Position numbers and translations under genes: made by a program | In this document: positions 56,427 to 63,900 of the stretch, one piece after another | Layout of the letters: every line of letters starts with the position of its first letter | How positions within the stretch are numbered: the stretch's first letter is position 1 | From: Perkinsus chesapeaki ATCC PRA-425 | Lineage: Eukaryota > Protista > Perkinsozoa | Assembly: GCA_013115145.1 (NCBI GenBank) | Contig: JAAPAO010000089.1 | Location: forward strand, 1-64,000 | Direction of reading: 5' to 3' | Length of the DNA stretch: 64,000 nucleotides | Notes under the pieces: generated by a model | Told to the model about the DNA's origin: nothing | The model's database searches: none | What the model saw: the letters and a program-made list of their open reading frames with translations, nothing else

Positions 56427-56759
56427 CCATCGCTCTGTGAGGGGCTAGTGTCAGGTGAAGGGGACAGTTTTTGTGTCAGGTATACTTGCTCAAAGCATAG
56501 GACCATTTCATCATAGTATGTTCTTTGAATTTAAGCGATGGCAAGATATTGTTATCGTCTCATTTGGAGATTGCATTCTTCGACCTCAGTAAGATATTTC
56601 TTGCGATTTGTTCGGGTGCCATTGCATTGGTTTCCTCCGACCAACCCGTACTCTTTCTGCGCTTATCAAAACGACCTTTTCCCAGCTTTTTCTTGTGGAG
56701 CTCGGTCCGATCGCTGAGACCTAGATTATAATAATTTGATTTCTTATCAGGTACGCTGC

Positions 56760-57990
56760 CCGCGAGGGGGAGTCTTTTCTGAGAATTCTGTATCCTTCAA
56801 CTTTACATTTCTGTTGCATGTTTGTTGCTGCTGCTGTTTGCTGTTGTTGATGATGATGATCTCCGCTAAGCCTCAGGCCTCAGCAGCACTAGGAAGTAGT
56901 TTACTCGATCCACTCGCCGCCACCGCCCATCTGTAGAATTAGCTGCTCTTTATTTACCCTCTGGTGGTGTGCCTTTAAGAACCTTGCGCTTGTAGTTGCC
57001 AATAGCGTTACGAAAATGCTAGTTGGAGCAAGATGAGCAAGATTTTTACAATCTCCGTCCGTCCAGGTATATCTTTTCTGCATTGAATGTTCTGATTGGA
57101 TGAGCTTGACGAAGAAAGATTCTCGGTGTAGAAGGCCGAATCTGCTTGTCCTCCGTTATTCACATTTTCTGCTTGTTTGCTCAATGCGCAATTTATCAGT
57201 GCGTTAATCTCGATTGAACTTTTATTTTGCCTGTGAGTCAGTTGGCTGCTCTTTGAAGGTTGCGATCTGTCAAGGTAAGTCTCCTATCTTGGCTCTCTTC
57301 CGCAGACGGGGGATAAATTGTCCGCAGTTTCCGATCTAGAAAACGAGGGTTCCAGCTCACTGACTTTTGGTGTGTGTGATTTGAGTTCGTAGGCGTTGGA
57401 CGATAGGCGCTTTCACACACACGCTTTTGGTGGCGAGTAGTATATTTATAAACTTTGAACCAAGATGCTGCCAAGGATGGCACACTAAGCTTCACTCGAT
57501 CAGACTTCCGTTATGAATTTCTCATCCTTATGATTTCGTCTGACAATGAGTAAACTAGAGGACTGCGCCGATCGGAGTGCATCGCCCTCAACTTAACAGC
57601 GCAGGTCTTGGCTCCTCCCTCCGGGAATGATGCACCCAGGATCTCCAGATTTTTGAACTTCAGCGTCAGGCACATTTTCGGTGGCTGCTGGAGTGTGTTT
57701 CATTAGTGGTGCTCTGGTATATAGTATTCGCTGTTTTACAATACCATTTAGATTGCAATATTTTTCTAGTTGATAACGACTTTCGGAGTTTTTGTCGCTG
57801 TGCCGTCAGGCTTGGACGTCTCAGCCGTAGGTGGTCTAAGAGATTGTTGTCAGGCGATGATGATGGCGCTGATTGTTACCAAAGTGTCGCTGTGATGATG
57901 CATGACTTGTTGTAGATGTTATTACTTGTTATTGAAGTGTCAGCGGTGGCCTAGATTACTGCTGCTGTTGCTGGTCCTGAGCACCAAGCA
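56760..57990 (-). CDS. Multi-exon hypothetical protein (boundaries uncertain)
   Basis: Coding-like pieces (RRPSLTAQRQKLRKSLSTRKILQS; KLSVPSLAASWFKVYK; CKNLAHLAP; Q/H-rich tract). No family recognised. Confidence 0.3.
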
Positions 57991-58093
57991 TGCAGTACTC
58001 TGATACTAGTATCGATTCACGTAGGGTACGACAAGCGCACAGTCGTCGGCGTTGCGTTGGCCAGTTGGGGGGAAGAAAAAGTTCTGATAGTTG

Positions 58094-60565
58094 ATGAACC
58101 GTTGCTTGCCATATGACAATCTGTGGCTTAATTTCGTGGCGACTGCGAGAAAAAACCCCGACAAGACCGCCTTGCGGTGCAACTCAACCCTCGTGACGTA
58201 CGACCAGCTTCGACACCTTGCCGAAAGCCGCGCCTCTTCCCTTGGAGAGCTGGCCGCCTTATCGCCTGGGTCAAGAGTCCTCTTGTTGTTAAGTCGAGAC
58301 GCCGAGTTTATAGCGATGACCTTGGCTGTGTGGAAGCTAGACTGCACTATGATACCTTTGGACTCGGAACTGACGCCTGGGGAACGGGCAGAGCAAGTGA
58401 TCGAAGAGTCACAGTGTGACTTGGTTGTGACGAACCGCGAGAATGCCGCTGCTCTCACGGGGAAAAGAAGCAAAGTCGTCGCGGTGGAGGATCTTGTGTG
58501 GTCAGAGGTTGACAAGAAAGATACAAATGAGGTCAAGAGACGGTCAGCTCCTGCGTACATTATGTTCACAAGCGGCTCCTCCGGCCGTCCCAAAGGCGTA
58601 GTGGTCCCCCACTGTAACGTTGTGAACGTTCTCGAACATTTCTGTGCAGAAGTTGATCTCTCTTGGTCCAAGTGGTTGGCGGTGACGACCTTTCAATTCG
58701 ACATCTCCGTCCTCGAGTACATGCTTCCTTTGGTCATCGGCAAGGAGTGTCTAGTGGCCGACAGCAGGACCTGCCGGAACGGCTCCGAGCTGCTGAGATT
58801 GTTGCTGCAAGAAAAGGTTGATATTATGCAAGCCACGCCGACAACGTGGCAGCTGCTGGTCACCGCGGGGCTCCTCGACAAGGCGGCTGAGCTGCGCCCC
58901 AGATTGAGGGTGCTCTGTGGCGGCGAGCCGTTCCCGTCGAAGCTCCGCTGCTTGTGTGAAGTCAGTAAGATGGTTCTTAATTGCTACGGACCGACCGAAA
59001 CCACTATATGGTCGGCCACTTACCGTGTGACAGCCGAGGGCGACGGCGCGGTGCCTATAGGGAAGCCCATCAGGGACACCGTCTTCGAGATCACCGATTC
59101 AGGCGAGCTGCTTATCGGTGGCGCTGGTGTGGCCTCAGGCTACTTTAAGGCCGATTTGGCCGCGCCTTGCCAAACAGGGGGCTTCACTGTGGAAGGCTGG
59201 TACGCTACCGGAGACCGTGTTGCTGTTGATGCTGACGGAAACTATCTGTTCCGTGGCAGAATGAGCGACACTCAGGTGAAGGTGCGAGGGTATCGTATCG
59301 AGCTCGGTGAGATCGAAGTGGCCCTTGGCAAACTACTCGGTGACCAAATTCAGTGCGCAGTCGTCCCACACAATGACCACCTCGCCGCCTTTGCTGTCGG
59401 CACTGCCGAGGCTTCTCTGAATGTCCCCAGTCTTAAACGACAGCTCGGCAGAGTGCTACCGCCGTACATGATCCCAACGTGGTTCAGAGCCATACCGTTC
59501 CTTCCGGTAACTCTTAATGGCAAGCTCGACAGGAAGGCTTTGTCCGCCTATCCCGTCCTAGTGGATACCAAGAAGCCTACGGTGTCTGTCGGCTGTGTGC
59601 GAGATCGAATTAAGGAGTGCTTGAGACTCGTTCTGGGCTCCGATGTGGTAGAAGATGCACCGCTCGCCGAGCAGGGCGTCACTTCCCTATTGGCCGTGGT
59701 TCTAGTTGAGGCTCTATCCGAAACCTTGGGGGTCTCGGTTGACGTCGAGCATGTGTTCGCCCATGCTCGAGCCGAGTCTTTCATTTCCTTCGTGGAAGAC
59801 CTGGGGGTCATACAACCTCACAGCACCGATGGTACAAAAACCAAGGCCGGGAAGAAGTCCAAGAAGCTCGACCCGTTCATGGCCGCCTGCCAGGACGGCA
59901 CAGTGCTTCAGGCCTACAGCGCTGCCGACATAAAGAAGAAGTGTAACTCCGTGACGGACCGGTTTGGCTCCTCGCCCTTCCACTATGCTGCCGGCGCTGG
60001 CCACTTGGATGTGTGCAAAGCTCTGTTGGCGATGGGGGCTGATGCTTCCTATGGTGACAACAAAAGCGGCCGTAATGCCCTGCATTGGGCGGCTAGAAAT
60101 GGCAGAGACGGTATGGTCGATTGGCTTCTGGATGCCTGTCACCTTCCCGTTGACAGCGACACCAAGGACGGCACCACACCGTTGCAGCTCGCGTGTTGGG
60201 GTGGCTTCCCGACTGTGTGCGATGTTCTGGTGCGTAGAGGGGCAGACGTGCACCATGTGAACCGCTGGGGCTGTATCGTCACTCACTTTGCAGCCTTGTC
60301 CGGGAAGCTGGAGACCATGAAGTGGTGCCATAGTGTGCTGAGCCCGGCTGAGCTGGTTCTTGGCAATGACCAAGGCCACACGGCGCTTCATAAGGCTGCC
60401 TATGGCGGCCACAGAGACATCTGCGAATGGCTTATCACTTTGGACTGCTTCAAGGAACTGCTCGACACACCGGATGTGCGGGGACAAACACCAGCGGTCC
60501 TTGCTCGGAAGGGCGGCCACGAAGAGCTTGGAGCATGGTTCGATGAATGCACACAGTTGCCGTGA
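58094..60565 (+). CDS. Intronless NRPS-like protein: adenylation domain, carrier (T/PCP) domain, ~6 ankyrin repeats
   Basis: A-domain motifs YIMFTSGSSGRPKGV, FDISV, NCYGPTETTI, YATGD, QVKVRGYRIELGEIE, NGKLDR. Carrier motif GVTSLLAV (Ser codon 59684-59686). Ankyrin repeats SPFHYAAGAGHLDVCKALL, NALHWAARNG, TPLQLACWGG, TALHKAAYGGH. No C, TE or R domain. Confidence 0.93.
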   Translation: MNRCLPYDNLWLNFVATARKNPDKTALRCNSTLVTYDQLRHLAESRASSLGELAALSPGSRVLLLLSRDAEFIAMTLAVWKLDCTMIPLDSELTPGERAEQVIEESQCDLVVTNRENAAALTGKRSKVVAVEDLVWSEVDKKDTNEVKRRSAPAYIMFTSGSSGRPKGVVVPHCNVVNVLEHFCAEVDLSWSKWLAVTTFQFDISVLEYMLPLVIGKECLVADSRTCRNGSELLRLLLQEKVDIMQATPTTWQLLVTAGLLDKAAELRPRLRVLCGGEPFPSKLRCLCEVSKMVLNCYGPTETTIWSATYRVTAEGDGAVPIGKPIRDTVFEITDSGELLIGGAGVASGYFKADLAAPCQTGGFTVEGWYATGDRVAVDADGNYLFRGRMSDTQVKVRGYRIELGEIEVALGKLLGDQIQCAVVPHNDHLAAFAVGTAEASLNVPSLKRQLGRVLPPYMIPTWFRAIPFLPVTLNGKLDRKALSAYPVLVDTKKPTVSVGCVRDRIKECLRLVLGSDVVEDAPLAEQGVTSLLAVVLVEALSETLGVSVDVEHVFAHARAESFISFVEDLGVIQPHSTDGTKTKAGKKSKKLDPFMAACQDGTVLQAYSAADIKKKCNSVTDRFGSSPFHYAAGAGHLDVCKALLAMGADASYGDNKSGRNALHWAARNGRDGMVDWLLDACHLPVDSDTKDGTTPLQLACWGGFPTVCDVLVRRGADVHHVNRWGCIVTHFAALSGKLETMKWCHSVLSPAELVLGNDQGHTALHKAAYGGHRDICEWLITLDCFKELLDTPDVRGQTPAVLARKGGHEELGAWFDECTQLP

Positions 60566-60900
60566 ACACCACCGAGTCTGTACTGGTTTCTACGTCTTTA
60601 TTCCGTTGGTCGTGTTGCGCTAGTGTTGCTAATGCGCTATCCTGTTCTACCTCTGCTCAGCTCCTCGACTTACTAATAGAATCGCCGCAGAGGGATGCAA
60701 AAGATGTCGGAATTTGTAGAAAGTTTTATCAAAAAAATTCGTAATGCGCTGACGCCGCTGTCTGCGTTCTCCACAATAGCCTTTTGTTCCCATGATAAAC
60801 TGTTATCTCCAGCGCCTTGCCTATTGTTGGTTCAAGAGCTCAGTTAGAGGCACTAAAATTAGAGACGGGTTGGTATAGGTTCAGTGGTATTACCCTAGCA

Positions 60901-63900
60901 ATGGCTTCGGACTTATATGCTTCATGTGGCTATTGTGGGGGTAGAGAGCAACAGCCACACTCCTTTACATGCAGTAGATGTCTAGATGTTAAGTACTGTA
61001 CCAAAGAACACCAGTCCTTGCACTGGAAGGAGGTAGGAGTCACATAAGGCTTATAGATTGGGAAACACAGTCCAAGAGGTTAGCTTGAAGCTTAGATTCC
61101 AAAGTTTCCTCGAAAACATCTGAGAGCCAAGCCCCGGTTTGAGCACTAGTTGGTGATGCAGTACCCTCCTGCTGCTTTGGTTCAACTACTAACGGTTAGT
61201 GACTAACCTTTCTATAGGCTCATTGCGAAGAGTGTCGCGGGAGAGGTGGGAAGGCTCCGACTTTGGCAGAACAAGTAGCGAGCTTACGATTGGCAATGCA
61301 GGTGAGAAAGCTCGAATGAAAATACTAGGAAGCTTAACGGCGGAGCGATGCAATATCTGAGCTGCGTCAGGCTCATGCGGAGAAGACAAGAAGGGTGTCG
61401 GAGGAGATTCTGAAGGCGGGAGCTGAGCGAGAACGGTAACGTTGCATGGTGCCATTTTTGGCAGTTGCTCATTTCGAGATGCCACTATTCGGTCCTAAGA
61501 GGTTAGACTTTTCATCAGAATCACCTTCTTAGTCGGTAACAGAGTTTCATTATCCCTCGGCGGTTTTTAAAGGGATGTTCGAACGTGCCTTAGCATGCCT
61601 GATCGGACTTGCTTGATACGTATGTGTGAAACATTCTTATAAGCAAACTAACTGATAACTTTCAAGTTGTGTATTGAAAACGCCAGGAATTTCGCTAACG
61701 TTGCAAAGAAACGCACGCGAGGTCTCGCTTCCACAAGATGCCTGTGTTCTCTAGTTTCGGACAAGGGACATCCGGTAGCTCTCGATAGACATGTTCACGC
61801 GGCAGTGAAATGAACTCCTGGTTGGCAATGTCAGCTTGACATACTGTATATAATAAACGGACTGTTGGCTTTTTCATTGAGGAATATTGTACTAGAATAT
61901 CAAGTTAATGTTATTATTAATAACTCAGAATATGGAAGGAAGTGTCTGCGGCGGGCGACGCGGTGAGAAGGATCGCCGAGGAAAAGCAACGAGCTGAGCG
62001 AGAGGTGGCAGCCTGACAGCTTTCGTTCCCTCGTAGCTGCTAAAAGGTGTTGAAGGCTCAAAGCGATTTGAAGGCAAAGTCAAAGGAGATTGAGATGTGC
62101 CTTACCATGATGGGAGGCCAATACGCTGCTGGTAATATCTCTCCCACTTGCATTGCGTTTTTGCTTTGGCTGCTTCCGAATATGGTACTTGGAGGGCCAC
62201 TGCTCGTCGTTTACAGCCTCTGGAGCCGTTTTCATGAAGGAATTGTGGTAGACTTCCAATTATTCTATTGTTAACTACGAGTCGCCGAGTGTCCTAAAGA
62301 GCGGTTGTTCGCATATCGTCACAAATCTTGTTCATTTTCACTCTGTTTCACTTTCTTCCATCAGGCTACGAAGAGTCCCCGGAATGGGGTCCTCCTCCAG
62401 CCTTGACAGCGGCTCAGCTATCCTTCATAGTGCAGAAATTGAGTCGACAAGGATGGGCTTTCATTGACGATTTTATCGACAGTGCCGCAGTGAACAAGAT
62501 GCGAACCTACTGGCTTGAGCGATACACAAGCGGTATGCCCATACACAGTGAGATTAGCAGTAGCCATTCTGGCTTTGAACAAGACGCAGTTTGAAGCGGC
62601 AAAGTGAAAGAGCATCAGTTGTTTTATTGATAGAAAAACAATCGAACAGTACATTGGAAATATGAGCGAAGAAATAAACAATATGACAATAGGGACTAGG
62701 GCGGCCCCGCCAAGCACCTACCGAGTGGCGAAAATTAGAGTGGGTGTGTCTAGCCGGTTTCCTGTATGCATTCAATGCGCTATTGTTTTTCACGCCTAGA
62801 AACCCACGCGTAAGTTTTTGGAAAATTGTTTTCTCGTGTTTTGCGCGGGAAATGTGGAGTCCGCATCCCATTGTGGACATATAGCAGGCAGTGCTATGAA
62901 CGTTAGTTTTCCGGGCTGGCTTCAATTTATCACGAGTCGCTCATTCAGGAGACGGCAACTTTGACCGAGGCCGTATGGGTGGCGGTCGTTCAGGAAGCAA
63001 CCTGAAGTACCTATCCGACAGCGAGGGGTTCCGGTGTGTCGCGGTCTAGATACGTGAATGAGGAATCTCGAGGGGACTTTGTGCGCTGGCTGTCCCCACA
63101 GGACGAGGATTGCCCCATGAGCTATAAGTGGCTGAGAGCAGGTAGCTTTTCCTGCGTATCCAATCACTCAGCGCTTTTTTGGCAAGAAGTCTTCCTTCAA
63201 TGGGCAAACTCATGGTTAATATTTATAGCTTATTCATTAACTGAAAACGACTTCTGGAAGGGAAGATGATGAGAAGTGATGTCTGGAGAACAGCGAAAAT
63301 TGTAGTGCGACAATAGTCATCTTCCTGCCTTTCTTCATATGCTTGTGAGTATAAATGTTGTTATATTGTTATATCGTATACCTTTTTCATTGTCCCTACA
63401 TGTTACATTTGCCACTAGATATCAAAGGGATCTCTTCGAGCTCTGTCAGCAGTAGACCTCCCATTGTTCAACTCGGGACTTGATGATGGTAAACTCATAA
63501 TAACAAATAGAAAATAGTAGTAGTGGCTCTCACTTATTATTTACGTAGTATAGCAAACTAACTAGCGTAACAGCTTTGCGTTACAGACAGATTTAAGGAT
63601 ATACAAGATAGCAAGATAAAACATGATACTTATTTTATCGATTAATAAAATGCTATCACAAGCTCCACTGTCTTTGTACCAGGAATGGATCGGCTTGTAT
63701 GTGATGTGGCGGAACGTTGCCAGGACATTCTTAAAAACGCCAAAACTGTGGTTGCGCAGAGCTCGATGGTCGCTATATACCCCAGTGAGATTCTTGCGCG
63801 CCAGCAAATACATATTGCCCTGTCTCAGAGTCCTCCGGCTGTGGTATTGAGTCACGGTACATAAGGCATATCGACAATCCTATCGATGACGGACGGATAC

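What the first reader, a model, noticed from the sequence alone, without database searches (positions are those of the whole stretch)
58094..60565. Stand-alone A-T-ankyrin NRPS-like protein with a glycine-type specificity code, intronless in an intron-rich genome
Seen: complete A domain, carrier domain with Ser, and ~6 ankyrin repeats. There is no condensation, thioesterase or reductase domain and no intron over 2.47 kb, whereas most neighbouring genes are heavily interrupted. Reading the ten GrsA-equivalent pocket positions by eye gives D-I-L-Q-L-G-C-I-W-K, a 9/10 match to the established Gly code DILQLG(L/M)IWK. Established: A-T proteins need a release or transfer partner (as in Ebony, CAR, Lys2). 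Inference: ankyrins replace the catalytic release domain and recruit an acceptor, so this could be an undescribed aminoacyl-transfer system (for example protein or lipid glycylation, or a trans-acting NRPS/PKS loading module), with the A domain probably acquired from bacteria.
Basis: partly seen in the sequence, partly recalled or inferred. Interest (0 to 1): 0.82.

Follow-up and report, generated by a model that had tools for sequence, protein, structure and literature searches.

The report
Glycine-loading enzyme with ankyrin docking tail
This is a real, intact Perkinsus gene for an enzyme that probably activates glycine, hangs it on its own carrier arm and uses a very conserved ankyrin tail to dock onto an unknown partner; related proteins occur in dinoflagellates and diplonemids, and nobody has tested what they do.

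Summary
It encodes a complete adenylation (A) domain with all ten core motifs, a carrier (T) domain with Ser531, a disordered basic linker, and six ankyrin (ANK) repeats plus a cap. No C, TE or R domain is present. The pocket code DILQLGCIWK was confirmed by alignment; it differs at one of ten positions from DILQLGLIWK, read from the aligned chain of PDB 5u89.

It is not a Perkinsus oddity. P. olseni has a syntenic, single-exon orthologue with dN/dS about 0.09. The same A-T-ANK layout, a glycine-type code and the carrier Ser occur in three dinoflagellates, two diplonemids, three euglenozoan-like genome assemblies and several metagenome contigs. Beedessee 2019 lists "A-PP-Ank-Ank" for Symbiodiniaceae in a supplementary table, without study.

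The A domain groups with bacterial glycine-type A domains. The family's own tree follows host phylogeny, so any bacterial acquisition is old, not recent.

The ANK domain is the most conserved part: 20 of 30 canonical binding-surface positions are invariant. This supports a conserved docking partner. One relative carries a C-terminal GGACT/AIG2-like domain.

Function is untested, and no RNA run covered the gene. This scan had noted the same stretch once before (s1-241986). Verdict: a new variant of a known kind, of moderate interest.

The parts
58094..60565 (+). Complete single-exon CDS of the A-T-ANK protein (823 aa plus stop)
   Evidence: It aligns colinearly with the P. olseni orthologue P0002, which is also single-exon (L001:1257-3731).
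58094..59563 (+). Adenylation domain (residues 1-490) with core motifs A1-A10. Examples: A3 at 58556-58597, A5 at 58979-58999, A8 at 59255-59317, A10 at 59516-59533.
   Evidence: Pfam PF00501 8e-60. TIGR01733 278 bits. PDB best matches are LgrA module 2, 5u89 and 4zxh. Motif coordinates. AlphaFold2 pLDDT is about 90.
58700..59011 (+). Substrate-pocket residues D203, I204, L207, Q246, L274, G276, C297, I305, W306. With K477 at 59522-59524 they give the code DILQLGCIWK.
   Evidence: About 100 of about 150 nearest bacterial A domains carry DILQLG[MLV][IV]WK.
59591..59806 (+). Carrier (T/PCP) domain, residues 500-571. The phosphopantetheine-site Ser531 is at 59684-59686, in the motif QGVTSLL.
   Evidence: PF00550 36.9 bits against a cut-off of 20.8. 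Ser531 is invariant in 11 family members. It lies at the N-end of helix 531-545.
59807..59878 (+). Disordered Lys-rich linker (residues 572-595) between T and ANK
   Evidence: pLDDT below 50 for residues 572-590. Relatives also have a basic linker here.
59879..60556 (+). Ankyrin domain: N-cap plus six repeats (residues 596-821). Invariant groove residues include K657, R660, R668, K691, D692, T694, W702, W725, C727, L735, Q760, H762, Y770, R796, Q798 and K806.
   Evidence: Pfam Ank_2 2e-42. pLDDT 90-98. 61 of 215 positions are invariant against 24 of 490 in the A domain. Surface positions are enriched for invariance.
60877..62000 (+). Downstream neighbour: a zf-MYND gene. It is trans-spliced at the AG at 60875-60876. 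Exons are 60877-61030, 61216-61298, 61368-61434 and 61928 onwards.
   Evidence: The RNA contig carries a spliced-leader-like 5' end and three GT..AG joints. The translation shows a MYND zinc finger. P. olseni has a zf-MYND gene in the same position.
57101..57943 (+). Upstream spliced + strand transcript (exons 57101-57272 and 57852-57943, 579-nt intron) with no ORF. It is either the 5' UTR of this gene or the 3' end of the upstream gene.
   Evidence: All three frames contain stop codons.

Best explanation
The gene encodes a free-standing, trans-acting glycine-loading module.

Shown from sequence:
- An intact NRPS-type A domain carries the glycine-type pocket.
- It is followed by a carrier domain with the conserved Ser, a flexible basic linker, and a six-repeat ankyrin solenoid whose concave-face residues are almost invariant across phyla.

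Inferred:
- The A domain makes glycyl-AMP and loads glycine as a thioester on the phosphopantetheine arm of its own carrier domain.
- The protein has no catalytic off-loading domain. The ankyrin groove therefore docks it onto a conserved partner protein, which removes the glycyl group in trans.
- The partner is most likely another thiotemplate enzyme (a condensation- or ketosynthase-type enzyme) or an acyltransferase. The ankyrin domain would then serve as a docking domain.

The family is old in Perkinsozoa plus dinoflagellates and also occurs in diplonemids. Its A-T part descends from bacterial glycine-activating NRPS modules.
For: - All core motifs, D203 and K477 are present.
- Code DILQLGCIWK against DILQLGLIWK read from the aligned 5u89 chain and DILQLGVVWK from 4zxh. 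That these chains are the glycine-activating DhbF A1 and AB3403 is from memory.
- About 100 of about 150 nearest bacterial A domains have the same code type.
- Every family member found keeps a glycine-type code, the carrier Ser and the A10 Lys.
- Purifying selection against P. olseni: dN/dS about 0.09 overall and 0.066 in ANK.
- ANK is the most conserved domain. Its canonical binding positions are invariant at 20/30 against 41/185 elsewhere (P=2.6e-6).
- No other domain is present, and the T-ANK linker is disordered.
- Dinoflagellates also fuse lone C, KS and AT domains to ankyrin repeats (Beedessee 2019 supplement; PMC7159223). This suggests ANK is a general docking device for trans-acting domains.
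- Earlier notes of this scan report C-domain and KS-containing synthetases in the same genome. I did not check these.
Against: - No biochemical data exist.
- No RNA run covering the gene was listed, so expression is not shown.
- Pocket position 322 is Cys in Perkinsus and Ala in some dinoflagellates, not Leu/Met/Val. The pocket could therefore be slightly larger than in proven glycine domains.
- Williams 2021 (PMC8283056) warns that code-based predictions in dinoflagellates can be wrong.
- No partner gene lies next to it in the window or in the three euglenozoan-like loci.
- AlphaFold2 pTM of 0.61 gives no fixed domain arrangement.
- The TIGR01733 score (278) is below its curated cut-off of 317.
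Confidence: 0.55

Rival explanations
1. Glycyl transfer goes to a non-thiotemplate acceptor. The ANK groove binds a protein, or holds the enzyme at a membrane, and the glycyl thioester is passed to a protein side chain, a lipid or a small amine. This is Dlt/Alm-like or Ebony-like logic without a dedicated transferase domain in cis.
For: - DltA-type models score well (NF003417, 196 bits).
- There is no C/TE/R domain.
- The invariant groove fits a single conserved protein ligand.
- The family occurs in organisms with no known glycine-containing polyketides, namely Perkinsus and diplonemids.
- Precedents known from memory: AlmE/F/G glycine addition to lipid A, DltABCD, and Ebony.
Against: - DltA scores are far below the curated cut-offs (196 against 476).
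- The A domain groups with modular NRPS glycine domains.
- No transferase partner has been identified.
- Ankyrin repeats have no catalytic activity.
Confidence: 0.2
2. The partner is a GGACT/AIG2-like gamma-glutamyl(amine) cyclotransferase. The carrier-bound glycine would take part in gamma-glutamyl protect/deprotect chemistry, as with BtrG in the butirosin carrier-protein pathway.
For: One family member (contig JACLAD010000019.1, L010:4736-8104) carries a GGACT domain in the same ORF after the ANK repeats. The hit is PF06094 at 3.7e-17, with YGTLKK and GEVY motifs. That protein has the same code DILQLGCIWK as Perkinsus.
Against: - Only one such fusion was found.
- No GGACT was detected in the window or in loci L001-L004.
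- That member differs at four otherwise invariant groove positions.
- A lone glycyl thioester cannot be cyclised.
Confidence: 0.1
3. ANK serves only for localisation or regulation. Glycyl-AMP or glycyl-S-T would then be consumed by free nucleophiles or hydrolysed, or the loaded state acts as a glycine sensor.
For: - ANK domains often localise proteins.
- The basic linker could be a targeting signal.
- No partner gene is linked in any locus examined.
Against: The carrier Ser is strictly conserved along with the full A10 and hinge motifs. This argues that thioester loading matters. The pattern of groove invariance is typical of specific ligand binding.
Confidence: 0.1
4. The gene is an artefact: a recent bacterial transfer, a contaminant, a chimeric contig or a decaying pseudo-enzyme.
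For: - The gene is intronless in an intron-rich genome.
- GC3 is 0.654, against 0.43-0.61 for other long ORFs in the window.
- The closest A-domain scores come from bacteria.
Against: - The eukaryote-type ANK fusion is shared with P. olseni together with the same downstream zf-MYND neighbour.
- DNA contigs span both flanks.
- dN/dS is about 0.09.
- The family tree is congruent with host phylogeny.
- No A-T-ANK was found among the bacterial-genome matches to two conserved ANK peptide patterns.
Confidence: 0.03

Closest known systems
Bacterial glycine-activating NRPS modules: DhbF module 1 (PDB 5u89), AB3403 (4zxh/4zxi), LgrA module 2 (6mfz)
   Same: The A-T core is the same, with 35-39% identity to many bacterial modules and all core motifs present. 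The pocket code is the same type: DILQLG.IWK.
   Different: The bacterial proteins have C and/or TE domains and sit in assembly lines. This protein has neither, and carries a eukaryotic ankyrin solenoid instead. Pocket position 322 is Cys.
Dinoflagellate 'A-PP-Ank' gene models and other repeat-fused single PKS/NRPS domains (Beedessee et al. 2019, PMC6361889, Suppl. Table S4; freestanding glycine-predicted A domains)
   Same: The domain order is the same. The Perkinsus protein is orthologous to A-T-ANK proteins of Gymnodinium, Polykrikos and Prorocentrum.
   Different: Those entries were only tabulated. No family definition, ANK analysis or function was given. I did not fetch the Symbiodiniaceae sequences, so direct orthology to them is untested.
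Ebony (beta-alanyl-amine synthase), Lys2, CAR and ATRR: stand-alone A-T-X NRPS-like enzymes
   Same: A single A-T unit works outside an assembly line and is released by what follows the carrier domain.
   Different: In those enzymes X is catalytic (an amine-selecting, reductase or thioesterase domain). Here X is a non-catalytic repeat domain.
AASDH/ACSF4 (animal A-T fused to a PQQ-like beta-propeller repeat domain)
   Same: An A-T didomain is followed by a protein-interaction repeat domain, and the acceptor is unknown or debated (from memory).
   Different: The repeat fold differs (propeller against ankyrin), as does the predicted substrate. No homology beyond the A-T part was tested here.
DltA/DltC and AlmE/AlmF/AlmG aminoacyl-carrier systems
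   Same: An adenylating enzyme loads a small amino acid (D-Ala or Gly) on a carrier for transfer to a non-peptide acceptor.
   Different: In those systems the carrier is a separate protein and a membrane transferase is required. DltA models score below their cut-offs here.

Membership tests
NRPS amino-acid adenylation domain (ANL superfamily) | Core motifs A1-A10, including the P-loop-like A3, the hinge Asp in A8 and the catalytic Lys in A10 | tested here: met
   All ten motifs were located. PF00501 scores 203 bits against a cut-off of 29.9.
NRPS amino-acid adenylation domain (ANL superfamily) | Asp235- and Lys517-equivalents that bind the alpha-amino and carboxylate groups | tested here: met
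   D203 and K477 were identified by alignment.
NRPS amino-acid adenylation domain (ANL superfamily) | TIGR01733 score above NCBI's curated cut-off | tested here: not met
   278 bits against a cut-off of 317.4. This is a near miss of one curated threshold. The match covers profile positions 1-401 of 409.
Glycine-specific A domains | Stachelhaus code DILQLG(L/M/V)(I/V)WK | tested here: inconclusive
   9 of 10 positions match; position 322 is Cys. Family members P0384 and P0387 and loci L011/L012/L014 have the exact DILQLGLIWK.
Glycine-specific A domains | Glycine-dependent ATP-PPi exchange | not testable with these tools
   This needs a biochemical assay.
Carrier (T/PCP) domain | PP-binding fold with a Ser at the N-end of helix II | tested here: met
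   PF00550 scores 36.9 against a cut-off of 20.8. Ser531 is invariant and starts helix 531-545.
Carrier (T/PCP) domain | Phosphopantetheinylation by a PPTase | not testable with these tools
   No PPTase search of the genome was possible.
Ankyrin-repeat domain | Tandem 33-residue helix-turn-helix repeats | tested here: met
   Ank_2 at 2e-42. Six repeats plus a cap, pLDDT 90-98.
Canonical NRPS module (C-A-T) or A-T-TE/A-T-R NRPS-like enzyme | A condensation, thioesterase or reductase domain in cis | tested here: not met
   Pfam and NCBIfam find none. All 823 residues are accounted for by A, T, linker and ANK.
DltA-type D-alanine-carrier ligase | Score above the curated equivalog cut-off; a separate small carrier protein | tested here: not met
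   NF003417 scores 196 against 476, and TIGR01734 scores 194 against 560. The carrier is fused.
Protist A-T-ANK family (defined here) | A with a glycine-type code, T with Ser, and a C-terminal six-repeat ANK with the invariant groove residues | tested here: met
   Alignments A1 and A2, codes and tree.

The most novel reading that the evidence does not exclude
A-T-ANK proteins, together with a GGACT-like enzyme that is fused in one lineage, are the core of an undescribed pathway. The pathway would be widely conserved in dinozoans, diplonemids and other marine protists. In it, carrier-tethered glycine is delivered to an ankyrin-recruited acceptor. The outcome would be a non-ribosomal glycylation of a protein or lipid, or a common unknown metabolite, rather than a lineage-specific toxin.
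Probability: 0.15. Interest if true: 0.85.

Novelty: new variant of a known kind. Interest (0 to 1): 0.55.

Why it matters
Stand-alone A-T enzymes are normally understood through the catalytic domain that follows the carrier. Here that place is taken by a protein-binding solenoid that is better conserved than the enzyme itself, across very distant marine protists.

If the ankyrin groove's ligand were found, it would show how single-domain 'exploded' synthetases of dinoflagellates and their relatives assemble. That is a long-standing gap in understanding dinoflagellate toxin and metabolite biosynthesis.

Perkinsus can be cultured and transfected (from memory), unlike most dinoflagellates. It would therefore be a practical system for such a test. 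Perkinsus is also a shellfish parasite, so a conserved non-host enzyme is of some applied interest.

Tried and rejected
- The exhaustive representative search with the whole protein returned only giant multi-module NRPSs, because their domain scores add up. It was useless for finding the architecture.
- RNA evidence: no listed run holds the gene. Two tiny RNA libraries covered only the flanks. Expression and the 5' end remain unshown.
- Retrogene idea: no relic spliced-leader sequence occurs anywhere in the window at up to 3 mismatches. This is a weak test.
- Upstream non-coding DNA is not conserved with P. olseni.
- Neighbouring ORF pieces gave only a WD40 hit and no biosynthetic partner.
- A bacterial-genome scan for two conserved ANK peptide patterns of the family (HKAAYGGH and QLA[AC]WG..) found only ANK-only proteins of 30-35% identity, none with an A domain beside them. 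The scan was driven by those two ANK motifs alone.
- The AlphaFold DB cluster search gave only NRPS A-T folds.
- ESM Atlas searches with the ANK part, or with the ANK+GGACT part, gave generic ankyrin clusters.
- Papers: no hits for the assembly or contig accessions, nor for 'ankyrin repeat fused'. No paper characterises an A-T-ANK protein.
- The methyltransferase-like motif in the L010 insert gave no Pfam hit, so I make no claim about it.
Full report

Yes. The + strand carries one ORF, 58091-60565. Its first ATG is at 58094, directly after an in-frame TAG at 58088. The product is 823 aa.

Pfam finds AMP-binding (residues 16-351, 8e-60), PP-binding (504-566, 5e-9) and several ankyrin models (596-~810, Ank_2 2e-42). 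It finds no other family. NCBIfam's best model is the amino-acid adenylation domain TIGR01733, at 278 bits against a curated cut-off of 317. AusA, DltA, EntF and similar models follow, all far below their cut-offs.

I located all ten A-domain core motifs, and the carrier motif QGVTSLL with Ser531.

An AlphaFold2 model built on a 14-sequence family alignment has mean pLDDT 84:
- The A domain is confident.
- The carrier domain is a four-helix bundle at moderate confidence, with Ser531 at the N-end of helix 531-545.
- Two linkers are disordered (489-499 and 572-590).
- The ankyrin solenoid is very confident (pLDDT 90-98), with an N-cap and six repeats.
- pTM is 0.61, so the relative position of the domains is not fixed.

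No cryptic domain is hidden anywhere.

**2. The specificity code**

I aligned the pocket segment to solved structures. For 5u89 the aligned pocket residues read DILQLGLIWK, and for 4zxh they read DILQLGVVWK. The tool names these chains only as an 'amino acid adenylation domain protein' and ABBFA_003403. That they are DhbF A1-PCP-C and AB3403, both glycine-activating, is from memory. The window protein reads DILQLGCIWK.

A script mapped the ten positions on a MAFFT alignment of 164 A domains and gave the same code. About 100 of the roughly 150 nearest bacterial A domains carry DILQLG[MLV][IV]WK.

The one deviating position (322) is Cys here. It is Ala, Val or Leu in relatives. Glycine is the best prediction, but it remains a prediction. 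Williams et al. 2021 (PMC8283056) explicitly caution that such predictions have failed in dinoflagellates.

**3. Is the gene genuine, and whose is it?**

- The nearest protein is a 'hypothetical protein' of Perkinsus olseni: 824 aa, 67% identity, same architecture.
- Its gene is also a single exon (L001:1257-3731) and is followed by a zf-MYND gene.
- In the window, an RNA contig shows that the downstream gene starts at 60877 with a spliced-leader-like 5' end. It has three GT..AG introns within 1.1 kb, and its translation carries a MYND zinc finger. Gene order is therefore conserved between the two Perkinsus species.
- DNA contigs from two studies cover 56500-62000 without a single difference, one of them as a 13.9-kb piece. 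These may derive from the source strain, so synteny is the independent argument against a chimera or contaminant.
- Codon-level comparison with P. olseni gives dN/dS about 0.09 overall. It is 0.12 for the A core, 0.15 for T and 0.066 for ANK. dS is saturated, so these values are rough.
- No listed RNA run holds the gene itself, so transcription is not shown.
- Earlier notes of this scan name the genome Perkinsus chesapeaki. I did not verify that.

**4. The intron contrast**

The contrast is real. The gene is 2.47 kb without interruption, while no other ORF in the 64-kb window exceeds 305 codons. The neighbour has introns of 185, 69 and 493 nt. The gene's GC3 (0.654) is above that of the other long ORFs (0.43-0.61), and the P. 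olseni copy is similar at 0.683.

This is not evidence of recent transfer, as section 6 shows. A retrogene origin is possible, but no relic spliced leader was found in the window.

**5. It is a family**

A search restricted to the ANK part, but allowing full-length candidates, recovered more A-(T)-ANK proteins. Their sources are as follows:
- Dinoflagellates: Gymnodinium smaydae, Polykrikos kofoidii and Prorocentrum cordatum.
- Diplonemids: Artemidia motanka and Flectonema neradi.
- Three large ENA genome contigs whose genes are dense, co-directional and intronless, as in Euglenozoa.
- One run-derived (Logan) contig of unknown origin.

A metagenome scan added five more loci. The ESM Atlas holds two clusters of 66 and 60 members, automatically named 'Ligase/ankyrin repeat fused protein'. 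The few labelled members are chlorophytes.

Every member that could be read keeps a glycine-type code: DILQLGLIWK, DILQIGA[IV]WK, DIVQLGLIWK or DILQLGCIWK. Each also keeps the carrier Ser and the A10 Lys.

In the literature, Beedessee et al. 2019 state that monofunctional PKS/NRPS domains of Symbiodiniaceae are often fused to HEAT, ankyrin or PPR repeats, and that freestanding A domains are predicted to use Gly, Trp or Phe. Their Supplementary Table S4 lists 'A-PP-Ank-Ank' (962 aa) and 'A-Ank' models. The other tables list C-Ank5, Ank-KS and Ank-AT. Trans-AT proteins with ankyrin repeats are also reported in Gambierdiscus and other dinoflagellates. I found no paper that defines or tests the A-T-ANK family.

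**6. Origin**

I built a tree of 70 A domains: 11 family members, 45 bacterial glycine-type and 14 other. In it the family can be one side of a branch, with weak support (49) and long branches. It lies next to the bacterial DILQLG-type domains, and the non-glycine domains nest deeper among bacteria. A bacterial ancestry of the A-T part is thus plausible.

A careful tree of the family alone splits diplonemid/euglenozoan-like sequences from Perkinsus plus (JACLAD01, (P0381, dinoflagellates)), with support 83/83. This follows host relationships. The fusion therefore predates the Perkinsozoa-dinoflagellate split. A scan of 185,579 bacterial and archaeal genomes for two conserved ANK peptide patterns of the family returned only ANK-only matches, with no A domain attached.

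**7. What the ankyrin domain tells us**

It is the best-conserved part: 61 of 215 positions are invariant across 11 sequences, against 24 of 490 in the A domain.

I placed the six repeats in the standard register. I then took the five positions per repeat that form the target-binding face in designed ankyrin proteins (positions 2, 3, 5, 13 and 14; knowledge of DARPin design is from memory). Of these, 20 of 30 are invariant, against 41 of 185 elsewhere (hypergeometric P=2.6e-6). In ordinary ankyrin families these are the variable positions. This pattern is what one expects if the groove binds the same ligand in perkinsids, dinoflagellates and diplonemids.

Similar ANK domains (32-47% identity) also occur in other contexts. 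They are found alone, or fused to C2H2 fingers in oomycetes and Effrenium, and to J or OST-HTH domains in diatoms. None of the listed hits was fused to an acyltransferase.

**8. A lead: a GGACT fusion**

One relative, on contig JACLAD010000019.1 (assembly GCA_014466315.1), comes from an unidentified intron-bearing eukaryote. It has the same code as Perkinsus. After the ankyrin repeats, in the same ORF, it has a GGACT/AIG2-like gamma-glutamyl(amine) cyclotransferase domain (PF06094, 3.7e-17) with the YGTLKK and GEVY motifs. It differs at four otherwise invariant groove positions.

Enzymes of this fold remove gamma-glutamyl groups in carrier-protein and thiol-conjugate pathways; BtrG and GliK are examples from memory. 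The fusion hints at a functional link. However, it is a single case, and no GGACT was detected in the window or in loci L001-L004.

**9. Mechanism**

Shown: an intact A domain with a glycine-type pocket, a carrier with its Ser, no off-loading domain in cis, and a constrained ankyrin groove.

Inferred: glycine is adenylated and loaded in cis, and the ankyrin groove docks the loaded module on a conserved partner that takes the glycyl group. I rate this at 0.55. A thiotemplate partner is the most likely sub-case, because dinoflagellates fuse lone C, KS and AT domains to ankyrin repeats. Earlier, unchecked notes of this scan also report several A-TM-T-C synthetases and an NRPS-PKS in this genome.

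Rivals are:
- Transfer to a protein or lipid (0.2).
- A GGACT-linked pathway (0.1).
- ANK acting only in localisation or regulation (0.1).
- An artefact or recent transfer (0.03).

**10. Verdict**

The protein belongs to an unstudied but widespread protist family. Its architecture has been tabulated before in dinoflagellates. It is a new variant of the known A-T 'NRPS-like' kind, not a categorically new system.

New here are the definition of the family across phyla, the uniform glycine-type code, the invariant ankyrin groove and the GGACT-fused relative.

Noticed in passing
L010:3938-8104 (= L030:9347-13369), contig JACLAD010000019.1: This family member has a C-terminal GGACT/AIG2-like domain. 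It also has an insert between motifs A2 and A3 that contains a VPDVGGGTG (SAM-methyltransferase-like) motif. The A domain is split over two ORFs, by an intron or a frame break. The organism was not identified.
   Followed up: partly
window:60877-62000 (+): The downstream zf-MYND gene is trans-spliced. The RNA contig starts with a 23-nt spliced-leader-like sequence (core CCGTAGCCATTTTGGCTCA) joined after the AG at 60875-60876. Three introns of 185, 69 and 493 nt follow. P. olseni has the same neighbour.
   Followed up: partly
window:57101-57943 (+): A spliced + strand transcript (579-nt GT..AG intron) has stop codons in all frames. It ends 150 nt before the A-T-ANK start codon. It could be the 5' UTR, the 3' end of the upstream gene, or a non-coding RNA. 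A further 209 nt of the RNA contig map outside 56500-62000.
   Followed up: partly
window:57990-58094 (+): A 34-codon upstream ORF has its TGA stop overlapping the main ATG (TGATG). It is relevant only if the mature 5' UTR includes it.
   Followed up: no
window:58006-58671 (-) and 59714-60520 (-): Long antisense ORFs of 221 and 268 aa lie inside the gene. They are most simply explained as a by-product of the high GC3 of the sense frame. There is no evidence that they are genes.
   Followed up: no
window:59247-59280: In one DNA run the contigs break here, at a 34-nt piece of about 2.7-fold depth (180 against 66). This is probably a short repeated k-mer. A 13.9-kb contig of another run spans it.
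   Followed up: no
P0131, P0138, P0143, P0154 (proteins): The same ankyrin subtype (32-40% identity, sharing the TxDGTTP and NGHSALHKAA repeat signatures) is fused to a C2H2 zinc finger in oomycetes and the dinoflagellate Effrenium. In diatoms it is fused to J or OST-HTH domains.
   Followed up: no
window:53485-53799 (-): This ORF piece has a weak WD40 match (E=1e-4). It is the only Pfam hit among ten ORF pieces scanned, nine of them upstream of the gene and one downstream (62328-62591).
   Followed up: no
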